Positions 7,146 through 45,562 are shown, counted from the stretch's first letter. The stretch is 64,000 nucleotides of DNA from IMGVR_UViG_3300046543_000266:62001-126000; one strand, 5' to 3'. Notes: a model not told the origin generated them from the sequence alone. Made by a program: numbers and translations.

Positions 7146-7321
7146 TGAAACCGTTGCCGCGTGTGAGTCCCGCAGTTGAAGAGGTTCCCACTGGCGACGT
7201 AGGCACTCGGATTGGTATCGATCCGGTGCCTCCCACCATTCCGGTACAAGGGCAACGACAAGTCAAGTCACGCAGCGCCGTCAAGTTGAACGCTGCCCGG
7301 CGACTGGCAAAGGATAAATGA
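7145..7321 (+). CDS. 58-aa protein with C-terminal LNAARRL tag (missing from ORF track)
   Basis: Translated by hand: MKPLPRVSPAVEEVPTGDVGTRIGIDPVPPTIPVQGQRQVKSRSAVKLNAARRLAKDK; TGATG overlap with both neighbours. Confidence 0.7.
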   Translation: MKPLPRVSPAVEEVPTGDVGTRIGIDPVPPTIPVQGQRQVKSRSAVKLNAARRLAKDK

Positions 7322-8850
7322 TGGCCGCCCCATTCGTCTATTTCAAGGACACTGTGCAGGACACGGTGGTTCTGGCCGACATCACGTCGCTGCTGAACGC
7401 TGGCGAGACTATCTCGACTATCGTTGCCGGAACTCTGAGTCCTCAGTCCACACCCGCTCTGACGGCTATGATCACCAGTGGGATAAGCCCGCAGGTCTTG
7501 ATCGCGCTGTCCGGCGGCGTCAACAACACGAGCTACGGCTTCAAGCTGACGGTCACCACCAACGCCCGAGTGTTCCTCGTGTCGTGTGTGGTCACTGCTG
7601 CCGACAAGGAGTTCGTGCCGTACACCACGCAGAACCCAGACGCGTATCAGGATCTGGTGGACGAGGTAGAAGCAGGTAAGGCCGCAATCGGTACTGCAAT
7701 CTTCAGCTTCCCGCCGACCATCGATCCGCGGGGCGGGTTCGTTACGTGGGAGCTTCTGGCTTCCGACGGAACAGTGTACGCCGCAGGTAACGCCTACGAG
7801 TACAACGTCCAGTCTAACGGTCTGAGCAACACCGTGATCGGCAAAGCTGTTATCAGCATTCCGTCGACCGTTCCGCCGTCGCTGGATGGTCAGCGGTATC
7901 AGCTGCGATACACGTTGGAACTGCCGCAGTCGATTGGTGTGTCACCTGACCCGACAACCGGGTTGCAAGGACAGAACACCTTCTTCCAGTTCGAAGGCAT
8001 CCGCGTCGTTGGCCTGAACACGGTTCCGCTGGGAACGCAGCCTTCCGTCGAGCTCAAGGGTGTACCGGCTACGGTATCGATCGTTGTGGATCGTCCGTAC
8101 GACAACGTGACGGTCGAACTGTGGAGCGGTGGCACGCAGCTCAGTCCGCCGTCGCAGATCACCGACTTCGAGCGTACTGCGGACGGCTGGTATTACGCAG
8201 GTGTTATCGACACATCGCAGATGGAAGTCTCACTGGTCCCATACCAGATGGTGTGGAAGTATTGGGCGAGCACCAACGCAGCGATGGTGTATCAGGAGTC
8301 GGCTGATTTCTGGGTTATCAACCCGTCGATCATGAGCGCTATCTCGGATGTGAAAGCCAAAGTATCGAAGGCTCGCACCACGCTGTACGGTGCTCCAGAC
8401 CTGATCTACTCGACGCCGACGATCCTCACATGGCTGCGTCGGGGTGCCGACCAGTTCAATGGTGCCTACGGTCAGTTCACGAGCTTCACATTCACGAATG
8501 CACTCGGCGTCATCCGTGAATACTGGTTGATGTGCGCTGAGTTGTCGGCGCTGGAATCGCAGTATCTGGCGGAAGGCGAGAAAGCATTCAACTTCCAAGG
8601 CGCTGCTATCACGCTGGATGTGGACCGCACTCAGTACCTCGACAACGCGGCTTCGAAGATCCAATCCAAGTTGGACAACGAGCTCAAGTCGATCAAGGTC
8701 AATCTGATCATCAAGGGCAACACTGGCGGTGACGGTTCTGCGGATCCGAGTCGTCTGCGCGCTGGCGCTATCGGTGCAGTTGGTATCACCATCACACCCG
8801 CCTCGATGTGGGGTCGTTATGGTCCGGGTTACTTGCGAGGTCTTAGCTAA
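7321..8850 (+). CDS. putative head-tail adaptor/neck protein
   Basis: 510-aa beta-rich virion-like ORF; C-terminal region (ILTWLRRGADQFN...LDVDRTQY) recalls jumbo-phage neck proteins. Confidence 0.45.
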   Translation: MAAPFVYFKDTVQDTVVLADITSLLNAGETISTIVAGTLSPQSTPALTAMITSGISPQVLIALSGGVNNTSYGFKLTVTTNARVFLVSCVVTAADKEFVPYTTQNPDAYQDLVDEVEAGKAAIGTAIFSFPPTIDPRGGFVTWELLASDGTVYAAGNAYEYNVQSNGLSNTVIGKAVISIPSTVPPSLDGQRYQLRYTLELPQSIGVSPDPTTGLQGQNTFFQFEGIRVVGLNTVPLGTQPSVELKGVPATVSIVVDRPYDNVTVELWSGGTQLSPPSQITDFERTADGWYYAGVIDTSQMEVSLVPYQMVWKYWASTNAAMVYQESADFWVINPSIMSAISDVKAKVSKARTTLYGAPDLIYSTPTILTWLRRGADQFNGAYGQFTSFTFTNALGVIREYWLMCAELSALESQYLAEGEKAFNFQGAAITLDVDRTQYLDNAASKIQSKLDNELKSIKVNLIIKGNTGGDGSADPSRLRAGAIGAVGITITPASMWGRYGPGYLRGLS

Positions 8851-8884: not shown

Positions 8885-9328
8885 ATGTCAGCAATATGGG
8901 CTGCATTCATCAAGCTGTTAAACAATCCGATGGCGTTTGTATTGCTGATCATCGCACTGCTCGCCCTAATCGTGCTCTGGTCTATTCAGGCCAAGCGCGA
9001 CAACTTCGATCTACGCGCCCTCATCACAGATCCCCGCACGCACCAACCATCCGTCCACAAGATGGGTGAGCTGGTGGCGCTGATTGTCTCGACATGGTTG
9101 ATCGTTTATCTGGCCTTGAACGGTAAGATCGACGAGAACTACTTCGGCCTTTACATGGCAGTGTGGGCTGGAGCTCAGGTGGCAAACAACTGGGTGTCCA
9201 ACAAGTACAATCCGGCTGCCTCGACGACGGTCACCAGTTCCACGGTGTCCACGGTGGTCCCGTCCGGTGCAACGGTGGTTTCGACTGATGATAGTCAAAC
9301 CACCACGCCCGATCAGCAATCGCAGTAA
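8885..9328 (+). CDS. membrane protein (holin-like topology)
   Basis: Hydrophobic segments AFVLLIIALLALIVLWSI, LVALIVSTWLIVYLAL, YFGLYMAVWAGA; GGGAG RBS. Confidence 0.6.
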   Translation: MSAIWAAFIKLLNNPMAFVLLIIALLALIVLWSIQAKRDNFDLRALITDPRTHQPSVHKMGELVALIVSTWLIVYLALNGKIDENYFGLYMAVWAGAQVANNWVSNKYNPAASTTVTSSTVSTVVPSGATVVSTDDSQTTTPDQQSQ

Positions 9329-9345
9329 GACCACTCTAATCCTGC

Positions 9346-9352
9346 AATTTGA
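9346..9352 (+). promoter_or_regulatory. AATTTGA late-type promoter motif
   Basis: Intergenic, upstream of ATG 9380. Confidence 0.6.
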
Positions 9353-9379
9353 ACGTATCACTCGATAAAGGAAATCATC

Positions 9380-9865
9380 ATGGCAGCAATCACGTACGCA
9401 CAAGCCAAGACCGCTATCGTTGCGGCAGCTCTTCCGGCGTCTGCAGGTTCGGCATGGCAAGGCATCGACGACGGTTCGTATGATCAGTACGCGGCTGGCG
9501 CGTGCTACGCTGCGGGCGTCCCGTTCAACCGCAACGCTGCGCAATACGGCTTCGCGTATCCCGGTGAAATGCCGAACGCGATCGCTGGCGCAGTCAAGGG
9601 TGCTGGATACAGCGCAACGATGGCTGGCTCGCCGTTGACCGGTGCTCACCCGGCGACTGTCACCTGGACGCTGACGGAAACGAACGGCCCGGCCGATTCG
9701 TACTTCTGGGACTTCGGCGACGGCGTCACCGCAACGGTGTCGACCAACGCAGCGCAAGCACACTCGTATGCGGTGGCCGGTTCGTTCCGCGCCAAATGCA
9801 CGCCGTCGTTCAATGGCGTGGCTGACACCCAGATCATCGCCGCTGCACCGGCAGTCATCTCGTAA
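9380..9865 (+). CDS. PKD-domain virion decoration protein
   Basis: YFWDFGDG...HSYAVAGSF PKD signature; AAGGA RBS. Confidence 0.75.
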   Translation: MAAITYAQAKTAIVAAALPASAGSAWQGIDDGSYDQYAAGACYAAGVPFNRNAAQYGFAYPGEMPNAIAGAVKGAGYSATMAGSPLTGAHPATVTWTLTETNGPADSYFWDFGDGVTATVSTNAAQAHSYAVAGSFRAKCTPSFNGVADTQIIAAAPAVIS

Positions 9866-9876
9866 GGAGCGTAGCA

Positions 9877-10194
9877 ATGTGGGAACGTAGAGCCCGTTCG
9901 GGGCGCAGGAATTCACACGGTATCGCCAAGATCCGGCGAGATACGTATAACACCTCGAACGGGTTCTCCGTGAAGGCTGGATGGTGGGAGATCCGCGACA
10001 AGGTCTGGAAGCGAGACGGTGGTAAGTGCCGCTCGATGACTAGTGGCGTCTTCTGCCTGAAGCCGGGCACCGAAGTGCATCACATCATCCCGCTGTCCAA
10101 CGGCGGGACCACCACGATGGCTAACCTCATCACTCTGTGTCAGGGCTGCCACGATAAGCGTCATCGGCATCTATTCCGAGCGCGTTCCCGATAA
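9877..10194 (+). CDS. HNH endonuclease
   Basis: RDKVWKRDGGKC...EVHHIIPLSNGGTTTMANLITLCQGCHDKRH. Confidence 0.9.
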   Translation: MWERRARSGRRNSHGIAKIRRDTYNTSNGFSVKAGWWEIRDKVWKRDGGKCRSMTSGVFCLKPGTEVHHIIPLSNGGTTTMANLITLCQGCHDKRHRHLFRARSR

Positions 10195-10210
10195 CCAAAC
10201 CACCACGACT

Positions 10211-10573
10211 ATGACCGTAAAACTCCACGCGGGAATGCGCCTCCTGGCTGACAGCAATGAAGCCGGAGTGGCACTCACTGCCATCAAGAAGATCATCGGC
10301 CCCCACTTCGTCACCGACGAGGACCACGCAGAACAACGCATCCTGTGGCGTAGCAGCAAGATCCAAGCCGAGCTCGACTTGACGCTCGACGACGAAGACA
10401 TGCTGCTGTTCAGCTTCCGCACCCGAGGCTTTGCCGGCGGATTTGACGCTGAGGGCCACACGGCGCACGAGCTGTTCGCCGACATCCGCAAGCAAGTGAC
10501 CGAGTATCAGCCGTCGGGTCGCGTACCCAACGACATCGCGGCTCTGCGCAAGCGGTTTGCCAACATCCGATAA
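10211..10573 (+). CDS. putative internal head protein (LHAGMRL tag variant)
   Basis: 120-aa ORF beginning MTVKLHAGMRLLA. Confidence 0.6.
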   Translation: MTVKLHAGMRLLADSNEAGVALTAIKKIIGPHFVTDEDHAEQRILWRSSKIQAELDLTLDDEDMLLFSFRTRGFAGGFDAEGHTAHELFADIRKQVTEYQPSGRVPNDIAALRKRFANIR

Positions 10574-10582
10574 AGGACAACC

Positions 10583-11020
10583 ATGGATAAGCAGCAACTC
10601 CAAGAACTGATCGCGGCGTTTCTGAAAGTGAATCCGACGCCGACGGACGATCAGGTACATGCGCTGGCTGGCGCAGTCAACCTCGACCACGAGACGTTCG
10701 AAGCCGTTATGTACGAGATGCTGGCCGAGTCGGACGAAGTCAACGCCACATCCGAGCATACCGACGCTGAGAAGGTTCTCGACGGCGAGTACGACCCGAA
10801 CACCACGACGACCGACGATCTGGTGCTGAACGACGGAGCACCGGAAGGTACCTCCAGCCAACAGCAAGTGCAAGACTCGACGTTGGACGACGGTGTAGCA
10901 CCGGACGACGTTGGCCTCGACGTGAACTCGGACCAGTCGGCACTTCTGGACGATGGCGAAGTGATTCGCAGTCTGGCTGCAGTCAAGGTGAACGCGGCTG
11001 CTCGTCTGAAGGCAAACTGA
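10583..11020 (+). CDS. acidic putative head core protein with C-terminal VNAAARL tag
   Basis: D/E-rich ORF ending VKVNAAARLKAN; AAGGA RBS. Confidence 0.65.
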   Translation: MDKQQLQELIAAFLKVNPTPTDDQVHALAGAVNLDHETFEAVMYEMLAESDEVNATSEHTDAEKVLDGEYDPNTTTTDDLVLNDGAPEGTSSQQQVQDSTLDDGVAPDDVGLDVNSDQSALLDDGEVIRSLAAVKVNAAARLKAN

Positions 11021-11021
11021 C

Positions 11022-11729
11022 ATGGCCCATCCTTTCCTCTCGAATCTAGGGGTCGACGCTCTGGCACAGGGCCGGAGCCCCACGACGCAGACGTTCCCGT
11101 TGGCGTTCAATCAGAACAACGCCAGTGACTGGGCTGCTGCAGTCAATAAGACTGTGATGGGTGCCGACCCCACGGAGGATTGGGGTGCGGTCATCAAAGA
11201 GTACATTCATCTGTGTGCTCAGCGCGGCGTGTATCCGTTCCAGAACCTGCACGAGTCGAAGAACGATCAGATCGTCGACTTCCTGCGCGAGCGTCGTCGT
11301 GCATTCGTGCACTTCGTCAACATCACGGACTTCTTCCGCACGCTTACGCTGCGCGCTACTCATCGGCGCGTGACTGCTACGGAAAGCGGGTTTGTGCTCA
11401 CGGTGTATGCGCATACGCTCAACACCGACCCGTCGTTTGTTAAGTGGTTGATTGAAAGCCCGTTCCCGCGTTTCGATTTGGTACGCAAGAACGGTCGTTA
11501 CACCAAGCGCCTGATGCACGGCCTCGACGTCTTCGTTGAAAACGACTACGCCGACAACATGAAGGATCGGTGGGTCGTGGGGTACGACATCCACTGTCCG
11601 ATGTATCCGGATCTTCCTACCAACCACACTCCGTCCAAAGCAGAAATCGAACGATTCGTACTGGACGTGTGTTGGATGCCCCTACTGCGCGCGATGAGAC
11701 CACTTCGCACCACCCATCGCCTCATCTGA
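11022..11729 (+). CDS. hypothetical protein
   Basis: 235-aa ORF tightly packed in the operon. Confidence 0.7.
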   Translation: MAHPFLSNLGVDALAQGRSPTTQTFPLAFNQNNASDWAAAVNKTVMGADPTEDWGAVIKEYIHLCAQRGVYPFQNLHESKNDQIVDFLRERRRAFVHFVNITDFFRTLTLRATHRRVTATESGFVLTVYAHTLNTDPSFVKWLIESPFPRFDLVRKNGRYTKRLMHGLDVFVENDYADNMKDRWVVGYDIHCPMYPDLPTNHTPSKAEIERFVLDVCWMPLLRAMRPLRTTHRLI

Positions 11730-11757
11730 GGCAACAATAACGCAAGAGGAGTATCAA

Positions 11758-12060
11758 ATGGATTATCTGTCGTTGGCTAGTGAACTGTGGAAAGCTATCG
11801 TGGCTGTCCCGGCGTTCGGTGTCGGCATCGCTGTTGGTGCCGTCGGTTACAAGTATCTCCTGAAGAAGAATCCGGTGATGCTCAACAAACTGGTGGCTCT
11901 GGCAGAAGCGGAACTGCAAAAGGTTGCACTCGCGGCGGTTGCAAAAGCTGGTGCTGTCCCGTCGCCGGTTGCCACGTCGGCGGCTCTGGTTGTGGGCCTC
12001 GCTGAGGACGTCCAAAAAGAGGTCACAGTGGCTCCCGCAGTCGCACCTGTCACCAAGTAG
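11758..12060 (+). CDS. small membrane-anchored protein
   Basis: N-terminal hydrophobic helix AIVAVPAFGVGIAVGAVGY; AGGAG RBS. Confidence 0.65.
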   Translation: MDYLSLASELWKAIVAVPAFGVGIAVGAVGYKYLLKKNPVMLNKLVALAEAELQKVALAAVAKAGAVPSPVATSAALVVGLAEDVQKEVTVAPAVAPVTK

Positions 12061-12095: not shown

Positions 12096-12117
12096 AGTGG
12101 TAACTCCGGGCGTGCTA

Positions 12118-12125
12118 GTAAATAG
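12118..12125 (+). promoter_or_regulatory. GTAAATAG promoter motif
   Basis: Exact recurrent motif; only a terminator follows. Confidence 0.5.
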
Positions 12126-12142: not shown

Positions 12143-12182
12143 AGGGTTCCCCGGGTTAGTAATCTCGGGGAACCCTTTCTTC
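12143..12182 (+). terminator. Strong intrinsic terminator
   Basis: AGGGTTCCCCGGG / CTCGGGGAACCCT 13-bp stem followed by TTCTT. Confidence 0.85.
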
Positions 12183-12203
12183 GTTCGTGTCTTAGCATCT
12201 TGC

Positions 12204-12210
12204 AATTTTA
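12204..12210 (+). promoter_or_regulatory. AATTTTA late-type promoter motif
   Basis: Downstream of terminator, upstream of leader ORF and SNF2 gene. Confidence 0.6.
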
Positions 12211-12263
12211 GCCGTGAACCGCAGATATTGTGCGCGTTGACTCAACTAGCCGCGAGGACCCAC

Positions 12264-12320
12264 ATGAAACGTGGAACAGTTACCAAACATCAACATAACA
12301 AGGTCATCTATTATGGCTGA
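12264..12320 (+). CDS. 18-aa leader peptide overlapping SNF2 start
   Basis: GAGGA RBS, MKRGTVTKHQHNKVIYYG*, stop overlaps SNF2 ATG (ATGGCTGA). Confidence 0.4.
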   Translation: MKRGTVTKHQHNKVIYYG

Positions 12321-15300
12321 ACTCCGCCCAACAACCAATCTCGTGATTCCGGAAGATCTGATGCTTCCGAAGCGCGAGTGGAAGAACAAGTTTCTGTTCG
12401 TCTACAACAAGGGATACGTTGGCTCGCCGTCGGCATTCATGACGAAGCTCTGGGCTTCCGTACTTTTCCCGTCGCTTGCGCACGACCCGAAGTTCGGTAG
12501 CGTCAAGGGTAAGGCGGCGGCGAAGGCGCTGGCAGAAGTTACTCCGTACGGATATCTGCGTCTGAAGAAAGTGCTCGACCCCAAGAACCCGCACTTCGTC
12601 GTTAGCGTCCCGCTGTATAGTGGCCCGAAGTCGAACGGTCTGGGCGCGATGTCATTCCTGTCGAACTGGTTCCTTGGTGGGAACAAGATGAAGAACCCGC
12701 CGGAGCCGACTGCTGAAACGATCAGCGAACTCCGCGAGTTCCAGTCCAAGCTGACCGCAGAAGGTAGTCCCGACGAGATCCGCGACCAAGTGATCTCGGT
12801 TGATCGTGCAGTGCAAGCAATGCGTCTGCCGGCCGATCAAGCCCTCCAGCTGAAGTCCACGCTGCTCGGCATCCGGGTGCAGACCAAGGGTTATCTGGGC
12901 ATCATCTTCGCGGATTTCAAGATCACGAAGGAAGAAGCACAGCAGCTGACAACCACGCCGTGGACGGAACTGCGCGACATCGATCTGTATCCGCTGCTGC
13001 TCCAATGGGTCAAGACGACCTACGGCGAACGTGGCCCGGCTCCGATGACGAGCTTCCCGATCTCGAAGATCGCCATGACGCTGCCGCCTACGCATTCCGC
13101 GGACGCGCGCATCAACGAGAACAACATCTCGATCGGTCCGAAGGGCACGCCGTTCTACCTGCCGAAGGAACTGCCGAAGACTACCACGATCGACTACGAA
13201 GATCGCTACACGCAAGCGGGCGCGCGTGAAGACGGCAGCTTCTGTCTGTTCGATATCAACCAAGGCGCTCAGGCCATGTCTTCGGGCGCGAACCTGAAGA
13301 ACAACCTGCCGGTCAACATGCCGGTTCTGGTTGACTGGGTGAACCTGAAGTATGCGTACACCATGACGAATGGTGCGATGGAAGTGCTGGACCTCACGCG
13401 TTTCCGCGCTGCTGACGTCACCCACATCCGCAATCTGGTGGACGACACGGTCGTTACTCTGGAACTCATCGATCTGATGACTCGCATGGGTGAAGCCGCT
13501 GGTTGCCCCGCGTCGTCGCTGGCCCCGATCCCCACCGATCTGGAAGGTCTGCAGTTGGGTCCGGTTCTTGAACGTCAGTTCGAAGATGCCAAGCGTCCGC
13601 AAGACTGGTTCAAGGTCGCGGTTCTGGCCTACAAGAAGCTCGAAGAGCAAGACCGCATCACCATCGCCGACATCAACACCATCGGCTTTGGCCCGTTCCG
13701 TACGCTGGCTCGCTACTTCAAGCAAGTCGAGGCAACGGTTCGTGACAACATCGATCCGGTGTACAACAAGTATTCCGTGGCTACCGTCATCGAGGCAATG
13801 CCGTGGCTCGTGTTGATCGCCAAGTACACCGACGACATGCCGGGTCTGCGCGCATCGGACGTGGCGAACCGCAAGGCAGCCATCGATCAGGAAGTGGATC
13901 CGAACTGGAAGCCGCCTGCAATCCCGCTGTTGTCCGATCAGATTGGCTTCTTGCCGCACCAGTCGAAGGTGCGCAATCTGCTGAAAGATAGCCCGGACTT
14001 CGCAATGCTGCCGGTTCAAGCTGGTGGCGGCAAATCGATCCTGTTGTTGACCGACATCCTGTACGAGATCAAGGCCAATCGCAGCAACCCGTATCTGGTC
14101 CTGTGTCCGGGCCACTTGGTCGCCAACTACGTGAAGGAAGTGGTGTACTTCACGCAGGGTAAGCTCAACGTCGTAGCCATCTCGCGATTTGCTATCCGCC
14201 AGAATGGTTGGGCGCGTCTGCGGGCTATCCTGGAAGCGGCTCCGCGCAACACGGTGGTTGTCGCTGAGTACGATTGTTTGGCTTACCGTCAGCAGTCTGT
14301 GTGCTACGGCACGACGCCGGTGGAAGTGTTCCCGGTCATCGACTTCCTGCGCCAGTTCAAGTTCGGCTACGTCGCACTGGACGAATCGCATTTGGTCAAG
14401 AACGCTACCTCGCGTTCGAAGTCGACGGCAACGTTGATCACCGACATCCCGAAGAAGCGTCTGGCTTCGGGTACGATGGTTCACGACAGCCCTTCCGACT
14501 TGGCAATGCAGGTCTCCATGATGGACCCGACGCTGTTCGGCGATCGTGACAAGTTCAACGAGACGTACGGCGAAGTGGTTCGGGGTGGTCGCGTGGTCAA
14601 GTGGCGTGACGACGCACCGCAGAAGATTCAGCAGCGCATCCAAGGCCGTATCGTGTATGCGAAGGCTATGCGTAAGGAGTGGGCTGCCCTCTTGCCTACC
14701 AAGCGCGAATGGCTCGGTGGTGTTGAGCTGACCGAAGCTCAGCAGAATCTGTACAACGACATCTTGGACGACACGGTTGAGAAGATCACCGAGAAGGCCA
14801 AGAAGGGCAACAAGAACCTGCAGAAGTTCCTGGGTCTTGGTAAGAAGCCCGCAGTCAAGTCGGATGACGACGAAGACAACGGCGACGAGATCGTTGACGA
14901 GGACAACGAGGAAGAAGATGCAGCGGACGAAAGCGCAGGTGAAAGCGTCGAGAACGCACTGCGTCCGTACTTGCAGCGCCTCGAAACCTTCCTGATCGCT
15001 CCAGGTCGTGACGACGTGGGCAAGAACCTGCTGAAGGGCGACGATCTTATCAGCCCGAAGGCACTGGCAGTGTTGCGTCGTGCAGAAGCCCACATCTTCG
15101 GTGGTCAAGAAGAAAACGGCGATACCGGTCAGCTGGAAGCCTACGGTCCGTTCCCCGGCAAGGTGCTGATTTTCACGAACAACATCAAGTCGGCTGAAGA
15201 ACTGTGGGAACGTGCCAGCCCGCGTATGCGTGCCTGTGGTCTGCTGTATAAGGCCGCCCGCAAGATGGAAGACGGTTCCAAGTTCGAAAAGGATCCGAAG

Positions 15301-17004
15301 GTCAAGTGGATGGTTGGTGTTTCGTCGTCCATGGAAACCGGCCTCAACTTCCAGTTCGCCTCGCGCCTGATTCGTACGGAAGGTGTGTGGAATCCGGGTA
15401 CGCTGGAGCAAGGTAACAGCCGTATCAACCGCCCGGAACTGAAGGCAGAAGAGACCCGCAAGGAAATCTTCTTCGATACTATCGTGGCTAACCACACGAT
15501 CGATATCACGAAGGCAGCACGTCTGATCTCGAAGGTGATCGCGGCGGCGAAGTTCGAAAACGCCGAGAACTCTGAGTTCAAGACGATTCCCGACGTGGAA
15601 ATCATCAACATGTCGCTGCCGTCGATCCGGAACTTCAACTCGTGGCATGGTGATGGCACCGACGAGAACCCCGGCCTGAAGTCGTACGCCATTGCACAGG
15701 CGAAGTACGAAGATGTGCGGAACCGCGACTACGAGGAGTACAAGCAAGCGTACATCGAGAAGCATGGTTCGGGTCCTGTCAAGCAGTCGATCCCGGTGGC
15801 CCCGGTTCCGGCAGATGCAAAGTTGTTGAAGCGTGTCCCGTATGCTCCGGGTCTCGACATCTACAACGCCAAGGAAATGGGTCTGGTGCGCGTCGACGAG
15901 TACCTCAATCTGTCGTCCAGCAATGGCGACGACGAGGACGACGACACCAACGGTGGTGAAGAGGAAGAAAACGGCACGGACGCAGCGGCTGCAGAACTCG
16001 CAGCTCAAGCGGCAGCCCTGTCGGGTCGTCTGGTCCACACCGAGTTTGGCGAAGGGTACGTGCAGAAGTGCAGCCCGACCAATCCGTTTATCAGCGTCAA
16101 CCTGCTGAACGGCTATGCCATGACGGTGCGCAAGTCGCAGTGCTTCTTGGTGACCCGTGGTGAAACGTCAACCAAGGACATCCGCAATCAGCTGCTGAAG
16201 AGCGTGGGTGTTAAGAACATCGCCGATCCGGTGGATGTTCCGGCTGAGAAGTGGCGGCCGATGCGCAAGAGCATCAAGGAGCAGATTCAGCGCGAGAAGG
16301 AAGAGAAGGTTGTCCAACAGAAGAAGGTACGCGAGGAAGAAACCAAGTCCGCGCTGTCCGTCGAGTTGGCAGTCGTGCTGGTCAACGGCTTCTTGGGTCT
16401 CGACTACATCGTCGACGAGTCGAATCACAAGGCGATGCAAGCGCTGTCGGCAGTGGGCTTCCGCCCGACGCCGCAGTTCTACTACGCTCGTGTGGTCAAC
16501 GACAAGGCGCTGGTCAACCAGATGAAGCTGTGGAAGGAGCTGGGTCTGCGTCCGGATCCGGTGGTCATCAAGCAGAACATCCCGGCTGCGTTCGCTGAGC
16601 TGCTCGCCCTGTTGAAGAGCGGTCAGATCAAGAGCCACCACGCGACGTACAAAGCTGCAATGAACGCCAACATCGTGAATTTCTATCGCCTGACGCACAA
16701 GGCGTCGAACGACAAGATGTTGTTCAAGCCGTATCCGATTATCCAGGACGGTCAAGCGTACATCGCACTGCCGCTCGGTCAAGCTGGTACGAAGACTGCA
16801 ATGTCGCCGAAGTTCAAGCGGCCGTCGTACAAGTGGGCGCTGTCCGAACACTCGCTGTCGTATTACGGCACGATGCAGCAAGTGAACGGGATGATCAAGA
16901 AGCTGCAAGCGGCTGGCGTTCAGATCATGAACCTCGACGAGTTGAACGAGGAACTTGGTGCTCTGAAGAAGGCTAAGGTTCGCGCACCGTCCGAAGACAT
17001 CTGA
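12313..17004 (+). CDS. large SNF2-family (SF2) ATPase/helicase
   Basis: QAGGGKS (I), LDESH (II), LASGT (III), SMETGLNFQ (V), WNPGTLEQGNSRINR (VI); start placed at ATG 12313 after AAGGT. Confidence 0.85.
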   Translation: MAELRPTTNLVIPEDLMLPKREWKNKFLFVYNKGYVGSPSAFMTKLWASVLFPSLAHDPKFGSVKGKAAAKALAEVTPYGYLRLKKVLDPKNPHFVVSVPLYSGPKSNGLGAMSFLSNWFLGGNKMKNPPEPTAETISELREFQSKLTAEGSPDEIRDQVISVDRAVQAMRLPADQALQLKSTLLGIRVQTKGYLGIIFADFKITKEEAQQLTTTPWTELRDIDLYPLLLQWVKTTYGERGPAPMTSFPISKIAMTLPPTHSADARINENNISIGPKGTPFYLPKELPKTTTIDYEDRYTQAGAREDGSFCLFDINQGAQAMSSGANLKNNLPVNMPVLVDWVNLKYAYTMTNGAMEVLDLTRFRAADVTHIRNLVDDTVVTLELIDLMTRMGEAAGCPASSLAPIPTDLEGLQLGPVLERQFEDAKRPQDWFKVAVLAYKKLEEQDRITIADINTIGFGPFRTLARYFKQVEATVRDNIDPVYNKYSVATVIEAMPWLVLIAKYTDDMPGLRASDVANRKAAIDQEVDPNWKPPAIPLLSDQIGFLPHQSKVRNLLKDSPDFAMLPVQAGGGKSILLLTDILYEIKANRSNPYLVLCPGHLVANYVKEVVYFTQGKLNVVAISRFAIRQNGWARLRAILEAAPRNTVVVAEYDCLAYRQQSVCYGTTPVEVFPVIDFLRQFKFGYVALDESHLVKNATSRSKSTATLITDIPKKRLASGTMVHDSPSDLAMQVSMMDPTLFGDRDKFNETYGEVVRGGRVVKWRDDAPQKIQQRIQGRIVYAKAMRKEWAALLPTKREWLGGVELTEAQQNLYNDILDDTVEKITEKAKKGNKNLQKFLGLGKKPAVKSDDDEDNGDEIVDEDNEEEDAADESAGESVENALRPYLQRLETFLIAPGRDDVGKNLLKGDDLISPKALAVLRRAEAHIFGGQEENGDTGQLEAYGPFPGKVLIFTNNIKSAEELWERASPRMRACGLLYKAARKMEDGSKFEKDPKVKWMVGVSSSMETGLNFQFASRLIRTEGVWNPGTLEQGNSRINRPELKAEETRKEIFFDTIVANHTIDITKAARLISKVIAAAKFENAENSEFKTIPDVEIINMSLPSIRNFNSWHGDGTDENPGLKSYAIAQAKYEDVRNRDYEEYKQAYIEKHGSGPVKQSIPVAPVPADAKLLKRVPYAPGLDIYNAKEMGLVRVDEYLNLSSSNGDDEDDDTNGGEEEENGTDAAAAELAAQAAALSGRLVHTEFGEGYVQKCSPTNPFISVNLLNGYAMTVRKSQCFLVTRGETSTKDIRNQLLKSVGVKNIADPVDVPAEKWRPMRKSIKEQIQREKEEKVVQQKKVREEETKSALSVELAVVLVNGFLGLDYIVDESNHKAMQALSAVGFRPTPQFYYARVVNDKALVNQMKLWKELGLRPDPVVIKQNIPAAFAELLALLKSGQIKSHHATYKAAMNANIVNFYRLTHKASNDKMLFKPYPIIQDGQAYIALPLGQAGTKTAMSPKFKRPSYKWALSEHSLSYYGTMQQVNGMIKKLQAAGVQIMNLDELNEELGALKKAKVRAPSEDI

Positions 17005-17031: not shown

Positions 17032-17066
17032 GGGGAGGCCGGGAAACTGGCACTCCCCTTTCTTTT
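17032..17066 (+). terminator. Intrinsic terminator with GAAA tetraloop
   Basis: GGGGAG-GCCGG GAAA CTGGC-A-CTCCCC followed by TTTCTTTT. Confidence 0.8.
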
Positions 17067-17079
17067 CTCAGGAGTAGAT

Positions 17080-17736
17080 ATGAGCTTCAACTATCAAGCA
17101 ATCAAAGACGCCCTCAAAGAAGCTGGTCATCTCGTGTCCGAAGGCGAAGCGTGGGTGGCATCGGACTTCAGCGCGCTGTACCAGTTCGCGAAAGACAAGT
17201 TCGGCCTTCTGCATGACAAGGTCGCGTACGGTCTGGCCTTCCCGTCGGAACTGCCCACGGATTTCCCGGGCCATCCGAACGCCGGTGAAGAAGTCGTGGC
17301 CGTCGACACGAGCAAGCAAATCCAGCCGGTAGTCGTTCCGGCGGCGTCGACTGGTGTTACGTCGGTCGTGGACACCACGGACGCCAGCGTTCACGCAGCC
17401 ATCCTCGAAGCGCGCGTCGCTGCGGGTGTGCCGACTGGTCCGGCACCGGAAGCTGAAGCTGAAGAAGCCGCTCCGGTTGCTGACGAAGCTCCGGTTGCTG
17501 AAGAAGCCGCGGAACCCGTAGTCGAGCAACCGGCACCGGAAGTGAAGCAAGAAGCCGCTCCCGCTCCCGAAGTCAAGGAAGAAGTGAAGCAAGAAGCTGC
17601 TCCCGAAGTGAAGCAAGAAGCCGCTCCCGCTCCTGCTCCCGGAGTGAAGCAAGAAGCTGCTCCCACCCCACCCCCGGAAGTGAAGCAAGAAGCCGAGCAA
17701 GAGCAAGCTCCGTCCGACGACAAAGCGGCTGAGTAA
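17080..17736 (+). CDS. acidic Ala/Pro/Glu-rich protein with EVKQEAAP repeats
   Basis: AGGAG RBS; low-complexity repetitive C-terminal half. Confidence 0.75.
   Translation: MSFNYQAIKDALKEAGHLVSEGEAWVASDFSALYQFAKDKFGLLHDKVAYGLAFPSELPTDFPGHPNAGEEVVAVDTSKQIQPVVVPAASTGVTSVVDTTDASVHAAILEARVAAGVPTGPAPEAEAEEAAPVADEAPVAEEAAEPVVEQPAPEVKQEAAPAPEVKEEVKQEAAPEVKQEAAPAPAPGVKQEAAPTPPPEVKQEAEQEQAPSDDKAAE
17536..17697 (+). repeat. Imperfect coding tandem repeat (GAAGTGAAGCAAGAAGC units)
   Basis: Four near-exact copies encoding (E/G)VKQEA plus one EVKEE variant, with variable AP spacers. Confidence 0.8.
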
Positions 17737-22329: not shown

Positions 22330-22361
22330 GCTAATCACAAAACACGAAACGGAGTATCAAG

Positions 22362-23453
22362 ATGCGTACAAAAGTTAAGGTTCGTGCGTCCAAGACGCCG
22401 ATGGTGGCAGCCAGCGAGTATCGCTTCGACGGCGCGCTGACGGGTGAACGTGCAATCGGTCGCAACGGCGAAATCAACGCCAGCAACAAGCGTGACCTCA
22501 TCAACCGCCAAATGGCTTTCGTGCAAGCTGCTTCGAACGGCCAAGTCGCCGGCGATGCAGTGTTCGCTTCGGCAGAACAAGCAACGAAGGCTTCGAAGGA
22601 ACTCATCGCTGCTGCGTTCAACGACGGCGAAGCTCACCGCGTTCTGGGCGAGCGCATGGCTGATTCGCTGTACATCACGGCGAATCGCCAAGGCTTCATG
22701 CGCAAGTACCTGACCAAGATCACGGTCGAGCAGGGCGCAATCCCCCGCTTCCCGCTGCGCACGAAGAACGTGACGGCTGTGTACTCGACGTCGCCGACGA
22801 AGATCCAGTCGCAAATCACGCGCGACAAGTGGTTCACGCCGCCGGAACTGCAAGTGGTCACCCGTCCGTTCATTCCGATGAACGAACTGAACCAGTCGGC
22901 TGGCGACGTGCTGCAAGAAAAGTACGTGGAAGCAACGGAAGCCATCATGGTCGGTGAAGACCGCCTGTGGTACAACCAAGTGAACCAGATCGTCGGCGTG
23001 GACAACCCCCTGTCGATCATCTCTGGTCAGCTGACGCCGTACACGTTCGCGCAAGTCATGACCAACGTCACGCGTTGGGGCCTGAAGGCACCGCACGTCC
23101 TGATCGCCACGGACATCTATCAGGACATCATCGGTAACGCGGACTTCTTCAACGCGATCGATCCGGTTGCTCGCCACGAACTGCTGTTGACCGGCGAACT
23201 CGGCGTGATGTACGGTTGCACGATCACGTCGGACGCGTACCGTCACCCGGAGCACAAGGTGCTGAACCAAGGCGAATTCTTCGTGATCGCCGACGCTCTG
23301 AACCACGGCGCGTACTCGGATCGCGGCGGTCTGCAATCGCAGCCGACCGACATCTCGGTCGAGAAGATCCCGGGTCGCGGTTGGGTGATGTTCGAATCGC
23401 TCGCCGTGTCGGTTGCCAACAGCCGCTCGGTAGCAAAGGGCCTCCGTATCTAA
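22362..23453 (+). CDS. major capsid protein (HK97-fold, inferred)
   Basis: 363 aa, follows protease-scaffold-decoration; DIYQDII...ELGVMYGCTIT...GEFFVIA pattern typical of HK97-fold C-terminal half; strong codon bias. Confidence 0.8.
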   Translation: MRTKVKVRASKTPMVAASEYRFDGALTGERAIGRNGEINASNKRDLINRQMAFVQAASNGQVAGDAVFASAEQATKASKELIAAAFNDGEAHRVLGERMADSLYITANRQGFMRKYLTKITVEQGAIPRFPLRTKNVTAVYSTSPTKIQSQITRDKWFTPPELQVVTRPFIPMNELNQSAGDVLQEKYVEATEAIMVGEDRLWYNQVNQIVGVDNPLSIISGQLTPYTFAQVMTNVTRWGLKAPHVLIATDIYQDIIGNADFFNAIDPVARHELLLTGELGVMYGCTITSDAYRHPEHKVLNQGEFFVIADALNHGAYSDRGGLQSQPTDISVEKIPGRGWVMFESLAVSVANSRSVAKGLRI

Positions 23454-23473
23454 TACGGGAACGTCGAGTGATG

Positions 23474-23517
23474 CAGTATCAGGTAGCCGCATAAATGCAA
23501 AGTGCTACCTGATACTG
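23474..23517 (+). other. Perfect 14-bp inverted repeat downstream of MCP
   Basis: CAGTATCAGGTAGC / GCTACCTGATACTG. Confidence 0.7.
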
Positions 23518-32001: not shown

Positions 32002-32009
32002 TTATTTAC
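32002..32009 (-). promoter_or_regulatory. GTAAATAA promoter motif
   Basis: About 33 nt upstream of DnaB start; overlaps the upstream stop codon. Confidence 0.55.
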
Positions 32010-32310
32010 TGTCGGCCTGAATGACAGTAGTGGCGTGTCCACACTTAGTAAACTCACCGGTGCCGGTCTTCTTGTTGGTGCTGATGTACGGTGTGACGTT
32101 GCGGATCCCGAAGAAGTACAGGTATCCGTCCAAGCACATGAACTCCTTGGGTGACACTGTCGTATCCACCAGCAAGGGGTTGGATTTGGTATTGTAGTCG
32201 ACGCCCGGAATGCCATACTCGTGCAGCTTGTTTGAGATGCTGGCCTGAACGTCAGCCTTGCTGCAGGATGCCAGTGCAATGACACTAGCTAGAATGAGTG
32301 CTGTCTTCAT
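32002..32310 (-). CDS. lipoprotein
   Basis: MKTALILASVIALAS-C signal peptide II/lipobox. Confidence 0.75.
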   Translation of the reverse strand: MKTALILASVIALASCSKADVQASISNKLHEYGIPGVDYNTKSNPLLVDTTVSPKEFMCLDGYLYFFGIRNVTPYISTNKKTGTGEFTKCGHATTVIQADSK

Positions 32311-43127: not shown

Positions 43128-43135
43128 CTATTTAC
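43128..43135 (-). promoter_or_regulatory. GTAAATAG promoter motif
   Basis: About 34 nt upstream of SbcC-like ATG. Confidence 0.6.
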
Positions 43136-43178
43136 TTGCTGACGCAGAGCGTGGCGCTCGTGGATGTTGTCCACCAGA

Positions 43179-45529: not shown

Positions 45530-45537
45530 TTATTTAC
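45530..45537 (-). promoter_or_regulatory. GTAAATAA promoter motif
   Basis: Directly upstream of RBS of 45520. Confidence 0.55.
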
Positions 45538-45562
45538 TGTTGATGATTTAGTCGACAAAATA

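What the first reader, a model, noticed from the sequence alone, without database searches (positions are those of the whole stretch)
12313..17004. Giant late-expressed SNF2 ATPase with a PcrA/UvrD-like C-terminal Tudor motif, placed just upstream of protease-scaffold-capsid
Seen: complete SNF2 motifs, a roughly 540-aa unknown N-terminal region, two acidic inserts, and after the helicase core SGRLVHTEFGEGYV (16021-16062). That segment matches the V.H..FG.G.V pattern of PcrA/UvrD C-terminal Tudor domains. Established: those Tudor domains bind RNA polymerase, RapA is a bacterial SNF2 that recycles RNAP, and P1 DarB is a packaged helicase-domain antirestriction protein. Inference: a virion-packaged or late DNA translocase that remodels RNAP or nucleoprotein on phage DNA, for example clearing host silencers or driving early transcription after injection.
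Basis: partly seen in the sequence, partly recalled or inferred. Interest (0 to 1): 0.72.

Follow-up and report, generated by a model that had tools for sequence, protein, structure and literature searches.

The report
Jumbo-phage SNF2 motor with Tudor-like domain
A 1563-residue SNF2-type DNA motor, conserved in phiRSL1-like jumbo phages, carries a small Tudor-like domain resembling the RNA-polymerase-docking domain of bacterial PcrA/UvrD helicases, and its regulatory signals group it with the phage's DNA-replication genes rather than with the neighbouring capsid genes.

Summary
ORF 12313-17004 (+) encodes 1563 aa with an intact SNF2 ATPase core, a 545-aa N-terminal region of unknown kind, two acidic stretches, and SGRLVHTEFGEGYV at 16021-16062. 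The window comes from a 217.6-kb rhizosphere jumbo phage related to Ralstonia phiRSL1, whose ORF129 is 52% identical.

The motif lies in a predicted five-stranded Tudor/KOW-type barrel (aa 1232-1283). HTE[FYW]G[DE]G is kept even in homologues of 27-29% identity. A profile-profile comparison with PcrA/UvrD C-terminal domains gives 90.6% probability. Pfam's PcrA_UvrD_tudor model hits none of 42 family members, and the domain is internal, not C-terminal.

"Late-expressed" and "virion-packaged" are not supported:
- The gene is bracketed by conserved hairpins.
- It is preceded by AGTAAATA, an 8-mer found 30 times in the genome (about 2.6 expected). The same 8-mer precedes the DNA polymerase, SSB, UvsX, DnaB and SbcC genes, but no head or tail gene near the ORF.
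- Distant homologues sit beside DNA polymerase and ligase genes.

Best reading: a replication-regulon dsDNA translocase, tethered through the Tudor-like domain, that clears RNA polymerase or other obstacles from phage DNA. RNA polymerase binding is untested; the complex prediction gave no answer. This is a new variant of a known kind, of moderate interest.

The parts
12117..12124 (+). AGTAAATA motif (TAGTAAATA with its 5' T), 189 nt upstream of the ATG. It is a candidate phage promoter or regulatory element of the replication-gene class.
   Evidence: The window holds 4 copies against 0.38 expected, and 0 of 100 shuffles reach 4. The genome holds 30 copies against about 2.6 expected from base composition, 26 of them with a same-strand ORF of at least 90 aa starting within 260 nt downstream. 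The motif is invariant at this position in 4 related contigs and is present before the SNF2 gene in BcepSauron and BCSR5, with the variant GGTAAATA in phiRSL1. It is enriched in three relatives' genomes: 17, 21 and 23 copies against 0-2 for the reversed control.
12143..12176 (+). A 13-bp GC-rich hairpin followed by TTCTTCGTT. It looks like a terminator and lies between the motif and the SNF2 gene.
   Evidence: Reported by the terminator scan. The RNA fold gives -41.1 kcal/mol with z -8.9. A hairpin is kept at the same place in relatives with changed sequence: 9 of 15 predicted pairs show a change on both sides in at least one sequence.
12201..12223 (+). Conserved leader block TGCAATTTTAGCCGTGAACCGCA, of unknown role.
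   Evidence: Most of its positions are invariant in the 4 aligned relatives. It is unique in the window even with 3 mismatches allowed.
12313..17004 (+). Complete SNF2-family ATPase gene of 1563 aa, the orthologue of phiRSL1 ORF129.
12313..13947 (+). N-terminal region (aa 1-545): a compact alpha/beta part plus a helical part, with no recognised relatives.
   Evidence: AlphaFold2 gives mean pLDDT 90.3 and pTM 0.79. There is no significant fold match in PDB by Foldseek, in PDB by VIA wide (best Z 5.1, helical part only), in AFDB clusters or in the ESM Atlas (TM <= 0.27). Pfam finds nothing. Only aa ~266 onward is shared with the Vibrio and Xanthomonas phage homologues.
13948..15432 (+). SNF2 ATPase core (aa 546-1040), both RecA-like lobes with all catalytic motifs.
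   Evidence: In homologues, inteins interrupt the gene at the Walker A motif, just after DESH, and near motifs V/VI.
14830..14967 (+). Acidic insertion between the two ATPase lobes (about aa 840-885).
   Evidence: D/E density, up to 18 of 30 residues.
15892..16005 (+). Acidic, disordered linker (aa 1194-1231) before the barrel.
   Evidence: D/E-rich. pLDDT is below 50 at model residues 161-180, which are aa 1201-1220.
16006..16161 (+). Tudor/KOW-like five-stranded barrel (aa 1232-1283).
   Evidence: AlphaFold2 places strands at model residues 200-240 with pLDDT about 85. VIA-align gives Z 4.4-5.5 and rmsd 1.1-2.5 A over 45-53 residues to PHF1/PHF19 Tudor and Spt5/NusG KOW domains. hhalign against a PcrA/UvrD CTD profile gives probability 90.6%. 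The motif is conserved in all homologues.
16357..16983 (+). C-terminal domain (aa 1349-1557): two beta-beta-alpha-beta-beta-alpha repeats, possibly nucleic-acid binding.
   Evidence: pLDDT is about 85-95. Only weak fold matches appear (Z 4.7-5.1) to LAGLIDADG-type folds (I-LtrI, I-OnuI, WhiA), the XPB damage-recognition domain and the T4 UvsW N-domain. The domain is conserved in distant homologues.
17032..17058 (+). Hairpin directly after the stop codon, followed by TTTCTTTTCT.
   Evidence: The fold of the 75-nt intergenic stretch gives -28 kcal/mol with z -2.7. A hairpin is present at the same place in three relatives with different sequences, and a T-run follows it in two of the four.

Best explanation
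The gene encodes a catalytically active SNF2-family double-stranded-DNA translocase that belongs to the phage's DNA-replication and recombination gene set. It is not a head component.

Its parts, in order, are:
- a family-specific 545-aa N-terminal module of unknown fold;
- the two-lobed SNF2 motor with an acidic insertion;
- a flexible acidic linker;
- a Tudor-like barrel whose first three strands carry the V-H-x-x-F-G-x-G-x-V signature of PcrA/UvrD C-terminal domains;
- a C-terminal twin beta-beta-alpha-beta-beta-alpha domain.

Proposed mechanism (inferred). The tethered barrel docks the motor on a partner protein, most likely host RNA polymerase, on which these phages depend. ATP-driven translocation then pushes or strips RNA polymerase and other bound proteins off phage DNA. 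This would resolve collisions between transcription and the phage replisome or recombination intermediates, as Mfd, RapA and PcrA/UvrD do in bacteria.

What is shown: the domain architecture, conservation of the catalytic motifs, the predicted Tudor-like fold, the profile similarity to PcrA/UvrD, and the regulatory motif shared with replication genes.

What is inferred: the partner, the substrate and the timing of expression.
For: - Active, constrained ATPase. The Walker A, DExH and motif VI arginine residues are invariant in 42 homologues of 33-80% identity. Inteins sit at three catalytic motifs in homologues.
- Tudor-like barrel. HTE[FYW]G[DE]G is conserved down to 27% overall identity. hhalign against 97 diverse PcrA/UvrD CTDs gives probability 90.6% and P 1.3e-6, with score 30.0 against 9.3 +/- 2.0 (maximum 20.1) for 200 column-shuffled templates. 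His and the aromatic residue of the motif occupy the positions of PcrA H681 and W684; these are two of the four conserved residues that Sanders et al. mutated to test RNA polymerase binding, and their point mutations greatly reduced that binding (PMC5397179). As in PcrA/UvrD, a disordered linker precedes the barrel.
- Regulation. AGTAAATA occurs 30 times in the genome (about 2.6 expected) and lies 35-104 nt upstream of the DNA polymerase, SSB, UvsX-like recombinase, SbcC-like and DnaB-like genes, and of a DEAD-type helicase. Within 6-30 kb of the window, the only copy is the one before this gene. That copy is invariant in relatives. Hairpins bracket the gene.
- Context elsewhere. Homologues in Vibrio, Xanthomonas and P. 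putida jumbo phages lie beside DNA polymerase, ligase and NUDIX genes.
- Host RNA polymerase dependence of phiRSL1 (PMC5468394).
- Iyer et al. proposed, independently, a recombination role for the distinct SNF2 helicases of these jumbo phage groups (PMC7824862).
Against: - No direct evidence for RNA polymerase binding. The complex prediction with E. coli RpoB 1-650 gave score 0.00, which the tool reports as neither support nor refutation.
- Pfam PcrA_UvrD_tudor and CarD_TRCF_RID hit none of 42 family members.
- At HMMER level, the UvrD/PcrA CTDs score no better than a chance hit to cyanase (E about 1).
- The profile match covers only strands 1-3. The conserved Lys of PcrA/UvrD strand 4 (K712/K708) has no conserved counterpart.
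- PcrA/UvrD CTD structures are not among the top 50 fold matches. All Z values are about 5, a range the tool calls common.
- In the phiRSL1-like clade the gene has kept its place inside the head-gene cluster for a long time, which could reflect a head-related role.
- AGTAAATA is not proven to be a promoter. Before this gene it is followed by a terminator-like hairpin, so its meaning for timing is an inference.
Confidence: 0.4

Rival explanations
1. A recombination or fork-remodelling motor. The SNF2 enzyme would be the functional stand-in for T4 UvsW or RecG in recombination-dependent replication. It would branch-migrate or anneal DNA, with the C-terminal twin domain recognising branched DNA. 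The Tudor-like barrel would bind a phage replication or recombination protein, or nucleic acid, rather than RNA polymerase.
For: The gene shares the AGTAAATA motif with the UvsX-like, SSB, SbcC-like, DnaB-like and DNA polymerase genes. Iyer et al. made this proposal for the SNF2 helicases of these jumbo phage groups (PMC7824862). Distant homologues are adjacent to DNA polymerase and ligase genes. The C-terminal domain gives weak fold matches to the T4 UvsW N-domain and the XPB damage-recognition domain (Z 4.8-4.9).
Against: SNF2 enzymes generally translocate on duplex DNA rather than unwind it (established knowledge). The fold matches are within the noise range the tool describes. This reading does not explain the specific PcrA/UvrD-like signature of the barrel.
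Confidence: 0.3
2. The protein is made late, packaged into the capsid and injected with the DNA. It would then act at the start of infection, for example in anti-restriction like P1 DarB, in clearing silencers, or in helping first-round transcription.
For: The gene lies inside the head-gene cluster, upstream of and on the same strand as the protease and major head protein. This order is kept in phiRSL1, BcepSauron, BCSR5 and Motura. phiKZ-type jumbo phages do package a predicted helicase (review PMC13282480).
Against: The gene is insulated by hairpins and carries the replication-class motif. Homologues in other jumbo phages are not near head genes. The N-terminus is part of a confidently folded domain and does not look like a disordered targeting propeptide. 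There is no methyltransferase or DarB-like domain.
Confidence: 0.12
3. A packaging helper. In this reading the protein is a late, non-virion motor that strips proteins or resolves structures on concatemeric DNA ahead of the terminase.
For: The conserved position in the head-gene cluster. The generic ability of SNF2 motors to displace proteins from DNA (established knowledge).
Against: The same points as for the virion reading: the regulatory motif, the insulation by hairpins, and the replication-gene context in distant homologues. No link to a terminase was seen.
Confidence: 0.1
4. The PcrA/UvrD likeness is only convergent. In this reading the barrel is a generic SH3-like module whose glycine-rich turn happens to resemble the PcrA/UvrD signature, and it has nothing to do with RNA polymerase.
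For: The same short motif (VHEQFGDGII) occurs in cyanase, an unrelated fold, and scores as well at HMMER level. Pfam finds no hit. The strand-4 Lys is not conserved.
Against: The motif sits on strand 1, the turn and strand 2 of a predicted Tudor-type barrel, as it does in PcrA/UvrD. The profile-profile score is about 10 standard deviations above shuffles.
Confidence: 0.08

Closest known systems
phiRSL1 ORF129 and its orthologues in BcepSauron, BcepSaruman, BCSR5 and Motura (PHROG family phrog_62, 'DNA helicase')
   Same: These are full-length orthologues of 37-52% identity with the same architecture and the same gene neighbourhood.
   Different: Nothing beyond 'DNA helicase', 'SNF2-like protein' or 'hypothetical protein' is annotated for them. 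No domain analysis or experiment was found in the literature searched.
PcrA/UvrD C-terminal Tudor domain (Pfam PF21196; PDB 5DMA, 6YI2, 7EGS)
   Same: A five-stranded barrel preceded by a disordered linker on a DNA motor. It has the V-H-x-x-[FW]-G-x-G-x-[VI] signature on strand 1, the turn and strand 2. The profile-profile probability is 90.6%.
   Different: The host enzyme here is SF2/SNF2, not SF1. The domain is internal, not terminal. The Pfam model does not detect it. T-E after the His is nearly invariant here and variable in UvrD. The strand-4 Lys is not conserved. The partner is unknown.
RapA (HepA), the bacterial SNF2 ATPase that recycles RNA polymerase
   Same: An SNF2 motor combined with Tudor-like domain(s) that contact RNA polymerase (as described in PMC5397179). 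It is a plausible functional analogue.
   Different: RapA's Tudor-like domains are N-terminal and paired. No RapA family model matched; the NCBIfam hits were generic SNF2 cores of other families. The N- and C-terminal modules here have no RapA counterpart.
Mfd (TRCF) and CarD RNA-polymerase-interacting domains
   Same: A translocase tethered to the RNA polymerase beta subunit through a Tudor-like barrel, which displaces stalled polymerase. This is a conceptual analogue.
   Different: PF02559 does not hit this protein. Mfd has a RecG-like SF2 motor, not an SNF2 motor.
T4 UvsW
   Same: A phage SF2 motor of the replication and recombination gene set with an accessory DNA-recognition domain. Iyer et al. 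proposed these SNF2 proteins as UvsW substitutes.
   Different: It belongs to a different helicase family. The only link is a Z 4.8 fold match between the UvsW N-domain and the C-terminal domain here.

Membership tests
SNF2/SWI2 ATPases (Pfam PF00176 plus Helicase_C) | SNF2-related N-lobe detected above the Pfam gathering score | tested here: met
   PF00176 matches with E 1.8e-16 at 60.5 bits, against a cutoff of 24.9.
SNF2/SWI2 ATPases (Pfam PF00176 plus Helicase_C) | Intact helicase motifs I, II, III and VI in both lobes | tested here: met
   GGGKS, DESH, SGT and QGNSRINR are present and invariant in 42 homologues. Helicase_C scores 19 bits, below its cutoff of 23.5, but lobe 2 aligns to Sulfolobus Rad54-like 1z63.
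phrog_62 (phage 'DNA helicase') | Full-length match to the family profile | tested here: met
   E 2.5e-112, covering aa 3-1562.
PcrA_UvrD_tudor (Pfam PF21196) | Match to the family HMM at or above the gathering score (23.9 bits) | tested here: not met
   There is no hit at E <= 10 for the segment alone or for any of 42 family members. The six-frame scan of the genome did not hit this ORF.
PcrA_UvrD_tudor (Pfam PF21196) | Five-stranded antiparallel Tudor-like barrel | tested here: met
   This holds in prediction only. AlphaFold2 gives five strands at aa 1240-1280 with pLDDT about 85. Z is about 5 to Tudor and KOW domains.
PcrA_UvrD_tudor (Pfam PF21196) | Signature V-x-H-x-x-[FW]-G-x-G-x-[VI], with the His and the aromatic residue on the interaction face | tested here: met
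   LVHTEFGEGYV is present. H is kept in over 90% of sequences, both G are invariant, and the F position is aromatic in nearly all sequences. hhalign aligns it to the UvrD signature.
PcrA_UvrD_tudor (Pfam PF21196) | Strongly conserved Lys on strand 4 (PcrA K712, UvrD K708), needed for RNA polymerase binding | tested here: not met
   No conserved Lys is found at the aligned position. The alignment of strands 4-5 is of low confidence.
PcrA_UvrD_tudor (Pfam PF21196) | Located at the extreme C-terminus of an SF1 UvrD-type helicase | tested here: not met
   The domain is internal (aa 1232-1283 of 1563) in an SF2/SNF2 enzyme.
PcrA_UvrD_tudor (Pfam PF21196) | Binds the RNA polymerase beta subunit or a UvrB hairpin motif | tested here: inconclusive
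   The complex prediction with E. coli RpoB 1-650 gave 'no answer'. The host is unknown. A biochemical test is needed.
RapA/HepA | Match to RapA family models, with paired N-terminal Tudor-like domains | tested here: not met
   The NCBIfam hits are only generic SNF2 cores of other families, far below their cutoffs. The N-terminal region has no Tudor-like match.
P1 DarB-type packaged antirestriction proteins | Methyltransferase plus helicase domains; presence in virions | tested here: not met
   No methyltransferase domain is found in Pfam or PHROGs. Virion presence cannot be tested with these tools.
Dpd-type (DpdE) SNF2 helicases of 7-deazaguanine DNA modification systems | Association with a DpdA/TGT transglycosylase | tested here: not met
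   The PADLOC DpdE hit (E 4e-15) covers only the generic N-lobe. No TGT family gene is present in this complete phage genome.

The most novel reading that the evidence does not exclude
A whole clade of jumbo phages that rely on host RNA polymerase has fused a copy of the PcrA/UvrD-type docking domain to an SNF2 motor. The fusion would occupy the host helicase docking site on RNA polymerase (the beta-subunit hairpin motif also used by UvrB). It would actively evict polymerase from phage DNA in step with replication. This would be a phage-encoded resolver of transcription-replication conflicts, built from parts not seen together in cells, and controlled by a motif-plus-hairpin leader shared across the clade.
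Probability: 0.2. Interest if true: 0.75.

Novelty: new variant of a known kind. Interest (0 to 1): 0.5.

Why it matters
Jumbo phages of the phiRSL1, Sarumanvirus and Matilda type are being studied as biocontrol and therapy agents, yet most of their genes are unannotated. This protein is one of their largest and best-conserved enzymes. Inteins target its catalytic motifs, which is typical of indispensable genes.

If the barrel does dock on host RNA polymerase, it would be the first phage SNF2 motor shown to manage collisions between transcription and replication. It would also show that the bacterial helicase-docking surface on RNA polymerase is a target of phage proteins.

Separately, the AGTAAATA motif gives a testable handle on the otherwise unknown transcription programme of this phage group.

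Tried and rejected
- Megablast of the gene against phage genomes found nothing.
- Pfam scans of the barrel, the C-terminal third and the N-terminal region, each alone, found nothing.
- A Pfam scan of all 42 barrel sequences gave only scattered chance families, with cyanase the commonest.
- The barrel profile against PDB sequences and against the E. coli K-12 chromosome put UvrD/PcrA at noise level, and the best E. coli hit was cyanase.
- The first attempt to collect diverse UvrD C-terminal domains returned only Enterobacterales sequences and was not used. The representative search replaced it.
- Fold searches of the N-terminal model in four libraries gave no match.
- An ESM Atlas feature search of the C-terminal domain gave no lead.
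- The complex prediction with E. coli RpoB 1-650 gave no answer.
- A search for the PcrA helicase-interaction motif in the phage proteome found no strict match.
- The sigma-70 promoter scan found nothing before the gene. k-mer recurrence of the leader was not informative.
- [CT]AATTTGA lies upstream of several structural-region genes but is not enriched (14 found, about 12 expected), so it was dropped as a candidate late promoter.
- BLAST detected no homology between the flanking genes here and those of the distant phages.
- The Dpd link was rejected because the genome has no TGT gene.
- Virion proteome and expression data for phiRSL1 and Matilda were unobtainable. The papers or their supplements are not held.
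- Only rhizosphere and soil DNA runs hold this phage, so no RNA evidence was available and read laying was not used.
Full report
**Source of the window.** The window is positions 62001-126000 of a complete 217,605-bp virus record with direct terminal repeats. Near-identical DNA is held only by rhizosphere and soil metagenome runs. By tblastn, the protein in question is 52% identical over its full length to ORF129 of Ralstonia jumbo phage phiRSL1. It is 45% identical to the homologues in Burkholderia phages BcepSauron and BcepSaruman, 42% to BCSR5 and 37% to Achromobacter phage Motura. A protein search found at least 159 relatives, most of them about 1500 aa, aligned end to end, and from metagenomes.

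**The observation.** The ORF from ATG 12313 to the stop at 17004 encodes 1563 aa.
- Pfam finds the SNF2 N-lobe at aa 576-841 (E 1.8e-16) and a sub-threshold Helicase_C at aa 948-1040.
- Solved SNF2 enzymes match the same stretches.
- Walker A (GGGKS 571), DESH 690, SGT 719 and QGNSRINR 1033 are present and invariant in a 42-sequence alignment spanning 33-80% identity.
- The first ~545 aa have no family match.
- Two acidic stretches lie at about aa 840-885 and aa 1194-1231.
- SGRLVHTEFGEGYV is aa 1237-1250, exactly nt 16021-16062.

**The Tudor question: fold.** An AlphaFold2 model of aa 1041-1563, built on the family alignment, has mean pLDDT 80. It shows a helical region after the motor, a disordered acidic linker, and five short strands at aa 1240-1280 with pLDDT about 85. 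A long charged helix and a well-ordered C-terminal domain follow. Structural alignment places aa 1232-1283 on PHF1, PHF19, MTF2 and TDRD3 Tudor domains and on Spt5/NusG KOW domains. Z is 4.4-5.5 and rmsd 1.1-2.5 A over 45-53 residues. These Z values are in a range the tool calls common. The fold class (an SH3-like Tudor/KOW barrel) is credible. A specific relative cannot be named from structure alone, and the PcrA/UvrD CTD entries are not in the top 50.

**The Tudor question: sequence.**
- Pfam's PcrA_UvrD_tudor model does not hit the segment, any of 42 family members, or this ORF in a six-frame scan.
- A family profile searched against PDB sequences lists the isolated UvrD and PcrA CTDs (7egs_B, 6yi2_A) at E 1.1-1.3. 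Cyanase scores better, because it happens to contain VHEQFGDGII.
- Cyanase is also the only hit in the E. coli K-12 chromosome.
- I then collected 150 representatives carrying the UvrD CTD from a 1.84-billion-protein library, reduced them to 97 sequences below 75% identity, and ran hhalign against the phage barrel profile. The result was probability 90.6%, P 1.3e-6 and score 30.0 over 28 columns covering strands 1-3.
- Two hundred column-shuffled templates gave 9.3 +/- 2.0 (maximum 20.1), and the reversed template gave 10.4.
- The match fades over strands 4-5, and the Lys that PcrA/UvrD need for RNA polymerase binding has no conserved counterpart.
- The signature itself is under very strong constraint. 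HTE[FYW]G[DE]G is unchanged in Vibrio, Xanthomonas and Pseudomonas putida jumbo-phage homologues that are only 27-29% identical overall.

My reading is that a Tudor-like barrel is very likely. Kinship with the PcrA/UvrD type is more likely than not, but it fails the formal family test. Its function is open.

**The other domains.**
- The N-terminal 560 aa model confidently as one compact unit (pLDDT 90.3, pTM 0.79). Nothing resembles it in PDB by Foldseek, in PDB by an independent aligner (best Z 5.1, on a helical sub-part), in AlphaFold DB clusters or in the ESM Atlas.
- The C-terminal domain (aa 1349-1557) is two beta-beta-alpha-beta-beta-alpha repeats. It gives only weak likenesses (Z about 5) to LAGLIDADG-type folds, the XPB damage-recognition domain and the T4 UvsW N-domain. 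This is a lead for nucleic-acid recognition, no more.
- Eight homologues carry inteins, inserted at Walker A, just after DESH, or near motifs V/VI. This pattern is typical of indispensable active sites.

**Gene context.** In this phage and in phiRSL1, BcepSauron, BCSR5 and Motura, the gene order is the same. A ~510-aa 'head-tail connector' gene comes first, then small genes including an HNH endonuclease and a ~235-aa gene. The SNF2 gene follows, then two small genes, the head maturation protease, a ~510-590-aa gene, a virion structural protein, the major head protein and later the sheath. In the more distant homologues the picture differs. There the SNF2 gene lies among DNA ligase, NUDIX and DNA polymerase genes, while the full C-terminal half, barrel included, is retained.

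**Regulatory signals.**
- A 13-bp GC-rich hairpin with a T-rich tail lies at 12143-12176 (-41 kcal/mol, z -8.9).
- A second hairpin with a T-run follows the stop codon at 17032-17058. Relatives have a hairpin in the same place with different sequences.
- Aligning the upstream spacer of four related contigs revealed two invariant blocks: TAGTAAATA at 12116-12124 and TGCAATTTTA.CC.TGAACCGCA at 12201-12223.
- AGTAAATA occurs 30 times in the genome, against about 2.6 expected from base composition. The window holds 4 copies against 0.38 +/- 0.63 in shuffles.
- Twenty-six of the 30 copies have a same-strand ORF of at least 90 aa starting within 260 nt downstream.
- Identified downstream genes include the DNA polymerase, SSB, a UvsX-like recombinase, an SbcC-like nuclease subunit and a DnaB-like helicase, all 35-104 nt away. 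Also among them are a DEAD-type helicase, a DnaJ-domain protein and many small unknown genes.
- The one structural-looking case, a tail-tube-like ORF, has the motif only 10 nt from the putative start.
- No copy precedes the protease, the major head protein, the sheath or their neighbours.
- The motif is similarly enriched in phiRSL1 (17 copies), BcepSauron (21) and BCSR5 (23), against 0-2 for the reversed control. Motura has none.
- In BcepSauron and BCSR5, and as GGTAAATA in phiRSL1, it again sits just upstream of a hairpin and the SNF2 gene.
- The phage has a weak candidate sigma factor next to the SSB/UvsX cluster.

I infer that AGTAAATA is a phage-specific promoter or other regulatory element of the DNA-metabolism gene class, and that the SNF2 gene is an insulated unit under that control. 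This is an inference. The motif is not proven to be a promoter. A terminator-like hairpin right after it is unusual and may mean attenuation or a protective 5' structure.

**Function.** What is shown is an active SNF2 motor with a tethered Tudor-like barrel and two further conserved modules, grouped with replication and recombination genes by motif and, in distant phages, by position. Established knowledge adds four points:
- SNF2 enzymes translocate on duplex DNA and displace bound proteins.
- PcrA/UvrD, Mfd, CarD and RapA use Tudor-like domains to reach RNA polymerase (PMC5397179; PMC8318588).
- phiRSL1 has no RNA polymerase of its own and is blocked by rifampicin (PMC5468394).
- Iyer et al. 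suggested a recombination role for these phage SNF2 proteins (PMC7824862).

The explanation I favour (0.4) is a motor that is docked on host RNA polymerase, or another partner, through the barrel. It would clear the template during phage replication. The main rival (0.3) is a UvsW-like recombination or fork-remodelling role with a different partner for the barrel. The one direct test available, a complex prediction with E. coli RpoB 1-650, returned no answer and counts neither way.

**Novelty.** The protein family is present in public genomes, annotated only as 'DNA helicase', 'SNF2-like protein' or 'hypothetical protein'. I found no paper describing its architecture, the barrel or its regulation. 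An SNF2 motor with an internal PcrA/UvrD-like barrel and two unrecognised flanking modules is a new variant of known kinds of RNA-polymerase-associated or remodelling ATPases. It is not a new category.

Noticed in passing
window 12117-12124, 32003-32010 (-), 43129-43136 (-), 45531-45538 (-); 26 more copies elsewhere in the genome: The 8-mer AGTAAATA occurs 30 times in the 217.6-kb genome (about 2.6 expected) and is co-oriented with downstream genes. It lies 35-104 nt before the DNA polymerase, SSB, UvsX-like, SbcC-like and DnaB-like genes. It is also enriched in phiRSL1, BcepSauron and BCSR5, but absent from Motura. It is probably a phage-specific promoter or regulatory element. Its TAAATA core recalls the T4 late promoter TATAAATA, although here it precedes replication genes.
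   Followed up: partly
outside the window: G000:C1:16117-17397 (+), = L003:811-2091: A 426-aa protein has several tandem barrels of the V-x-H-x-x-x-G-x-G-x-V type (for example VEHPTHGLGVV and VEHAEHGMGRI). It gives weak hits to CarD_TRCF_RID (E 1.6e-4, 22.1 bits against a cutoff of 23) and PcrA_UvrD_tudor (E 0.08). It is a second candidate RNA-polymerase-binding protein in the same phage.
   Followed up: partly
homologues P0009, P0023, P0050, P0054, P0058, P0066, P0077, P0088: Inteins (Hint, LAGLIDADG and intein-splicing domains) interrupt the SNF2 gene at three sites: Walker A (~aa 575), just after DESH (~aa 695-699) and near motifs V/VI (~aa 1016-1036). One protein (P0077) carries two.
   Followed up: partly
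window 12201-12223: The leader block TGCAATTTTAGCCGTGAACCGCA is nearly invariant in four related phages and unique in the window. It lies about 90 nt before the ATG and is not a sigma-70 promoter. Its role is unknown.
   Followed up: partly
window 17080-17736; L012:12568-13095 (Motura): In Motura, the gene just after the SNF2 gene is an Acb1-type anti-CBASS phosphodiesterase (Pfam E 2.4e-12). The window's 218-aa gene at that position shares only its first ~67 aa with the phiRSL1 and BcepSauron counterparts and has no family match.
   Followed up: partly
window 9877-10194: An HNH endonuclease gene lies a few genes upstream of the SNF2 gene here. One is found in the same place in phiRSL1, BcepSauron and Motura, and even in the distant Vibrio, Xanthomonas and P. 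putida phages.
   Followed up: no
window 7318-8850: The 510-aa gene that could be taken for the portal matches a 'head-tail connector' PHROG (E 1.5e-88) and, weakly, a podophage adaptor family (Gp77, E 5e-5). Its identity as the portal is not established.
   Followed up: no
outside the window: G000:C1:170468-171439 (-): A ~323-aa ORF gives a weak Sigma70 region 2 match (E 0.0018, below the cutoff). It lies beside the SSB/UvsX cluster and may be a divergent phage sigma factor.
   Followed up: no
window 5753, 9345, 17023, 27793, 29329: [CT]AATTTGA lies 16-57 nt upstream of several genes in the structural region, including the gene right after the SNF2 gene. Its genome-wide count (14) is about what chance gives (12), so it remains only a hint of another promoter class.
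   Followed up: partly
window 9000-12000 and 22335-23492, - strand: Long antisense ORFs (for example 10130-11110 and 22335-23492 on the - strand) overlap real + strand genes. They are artefacts of the high G+C content. Homology to phiRSL1 supports the + strand genes.
   Followed up: yes
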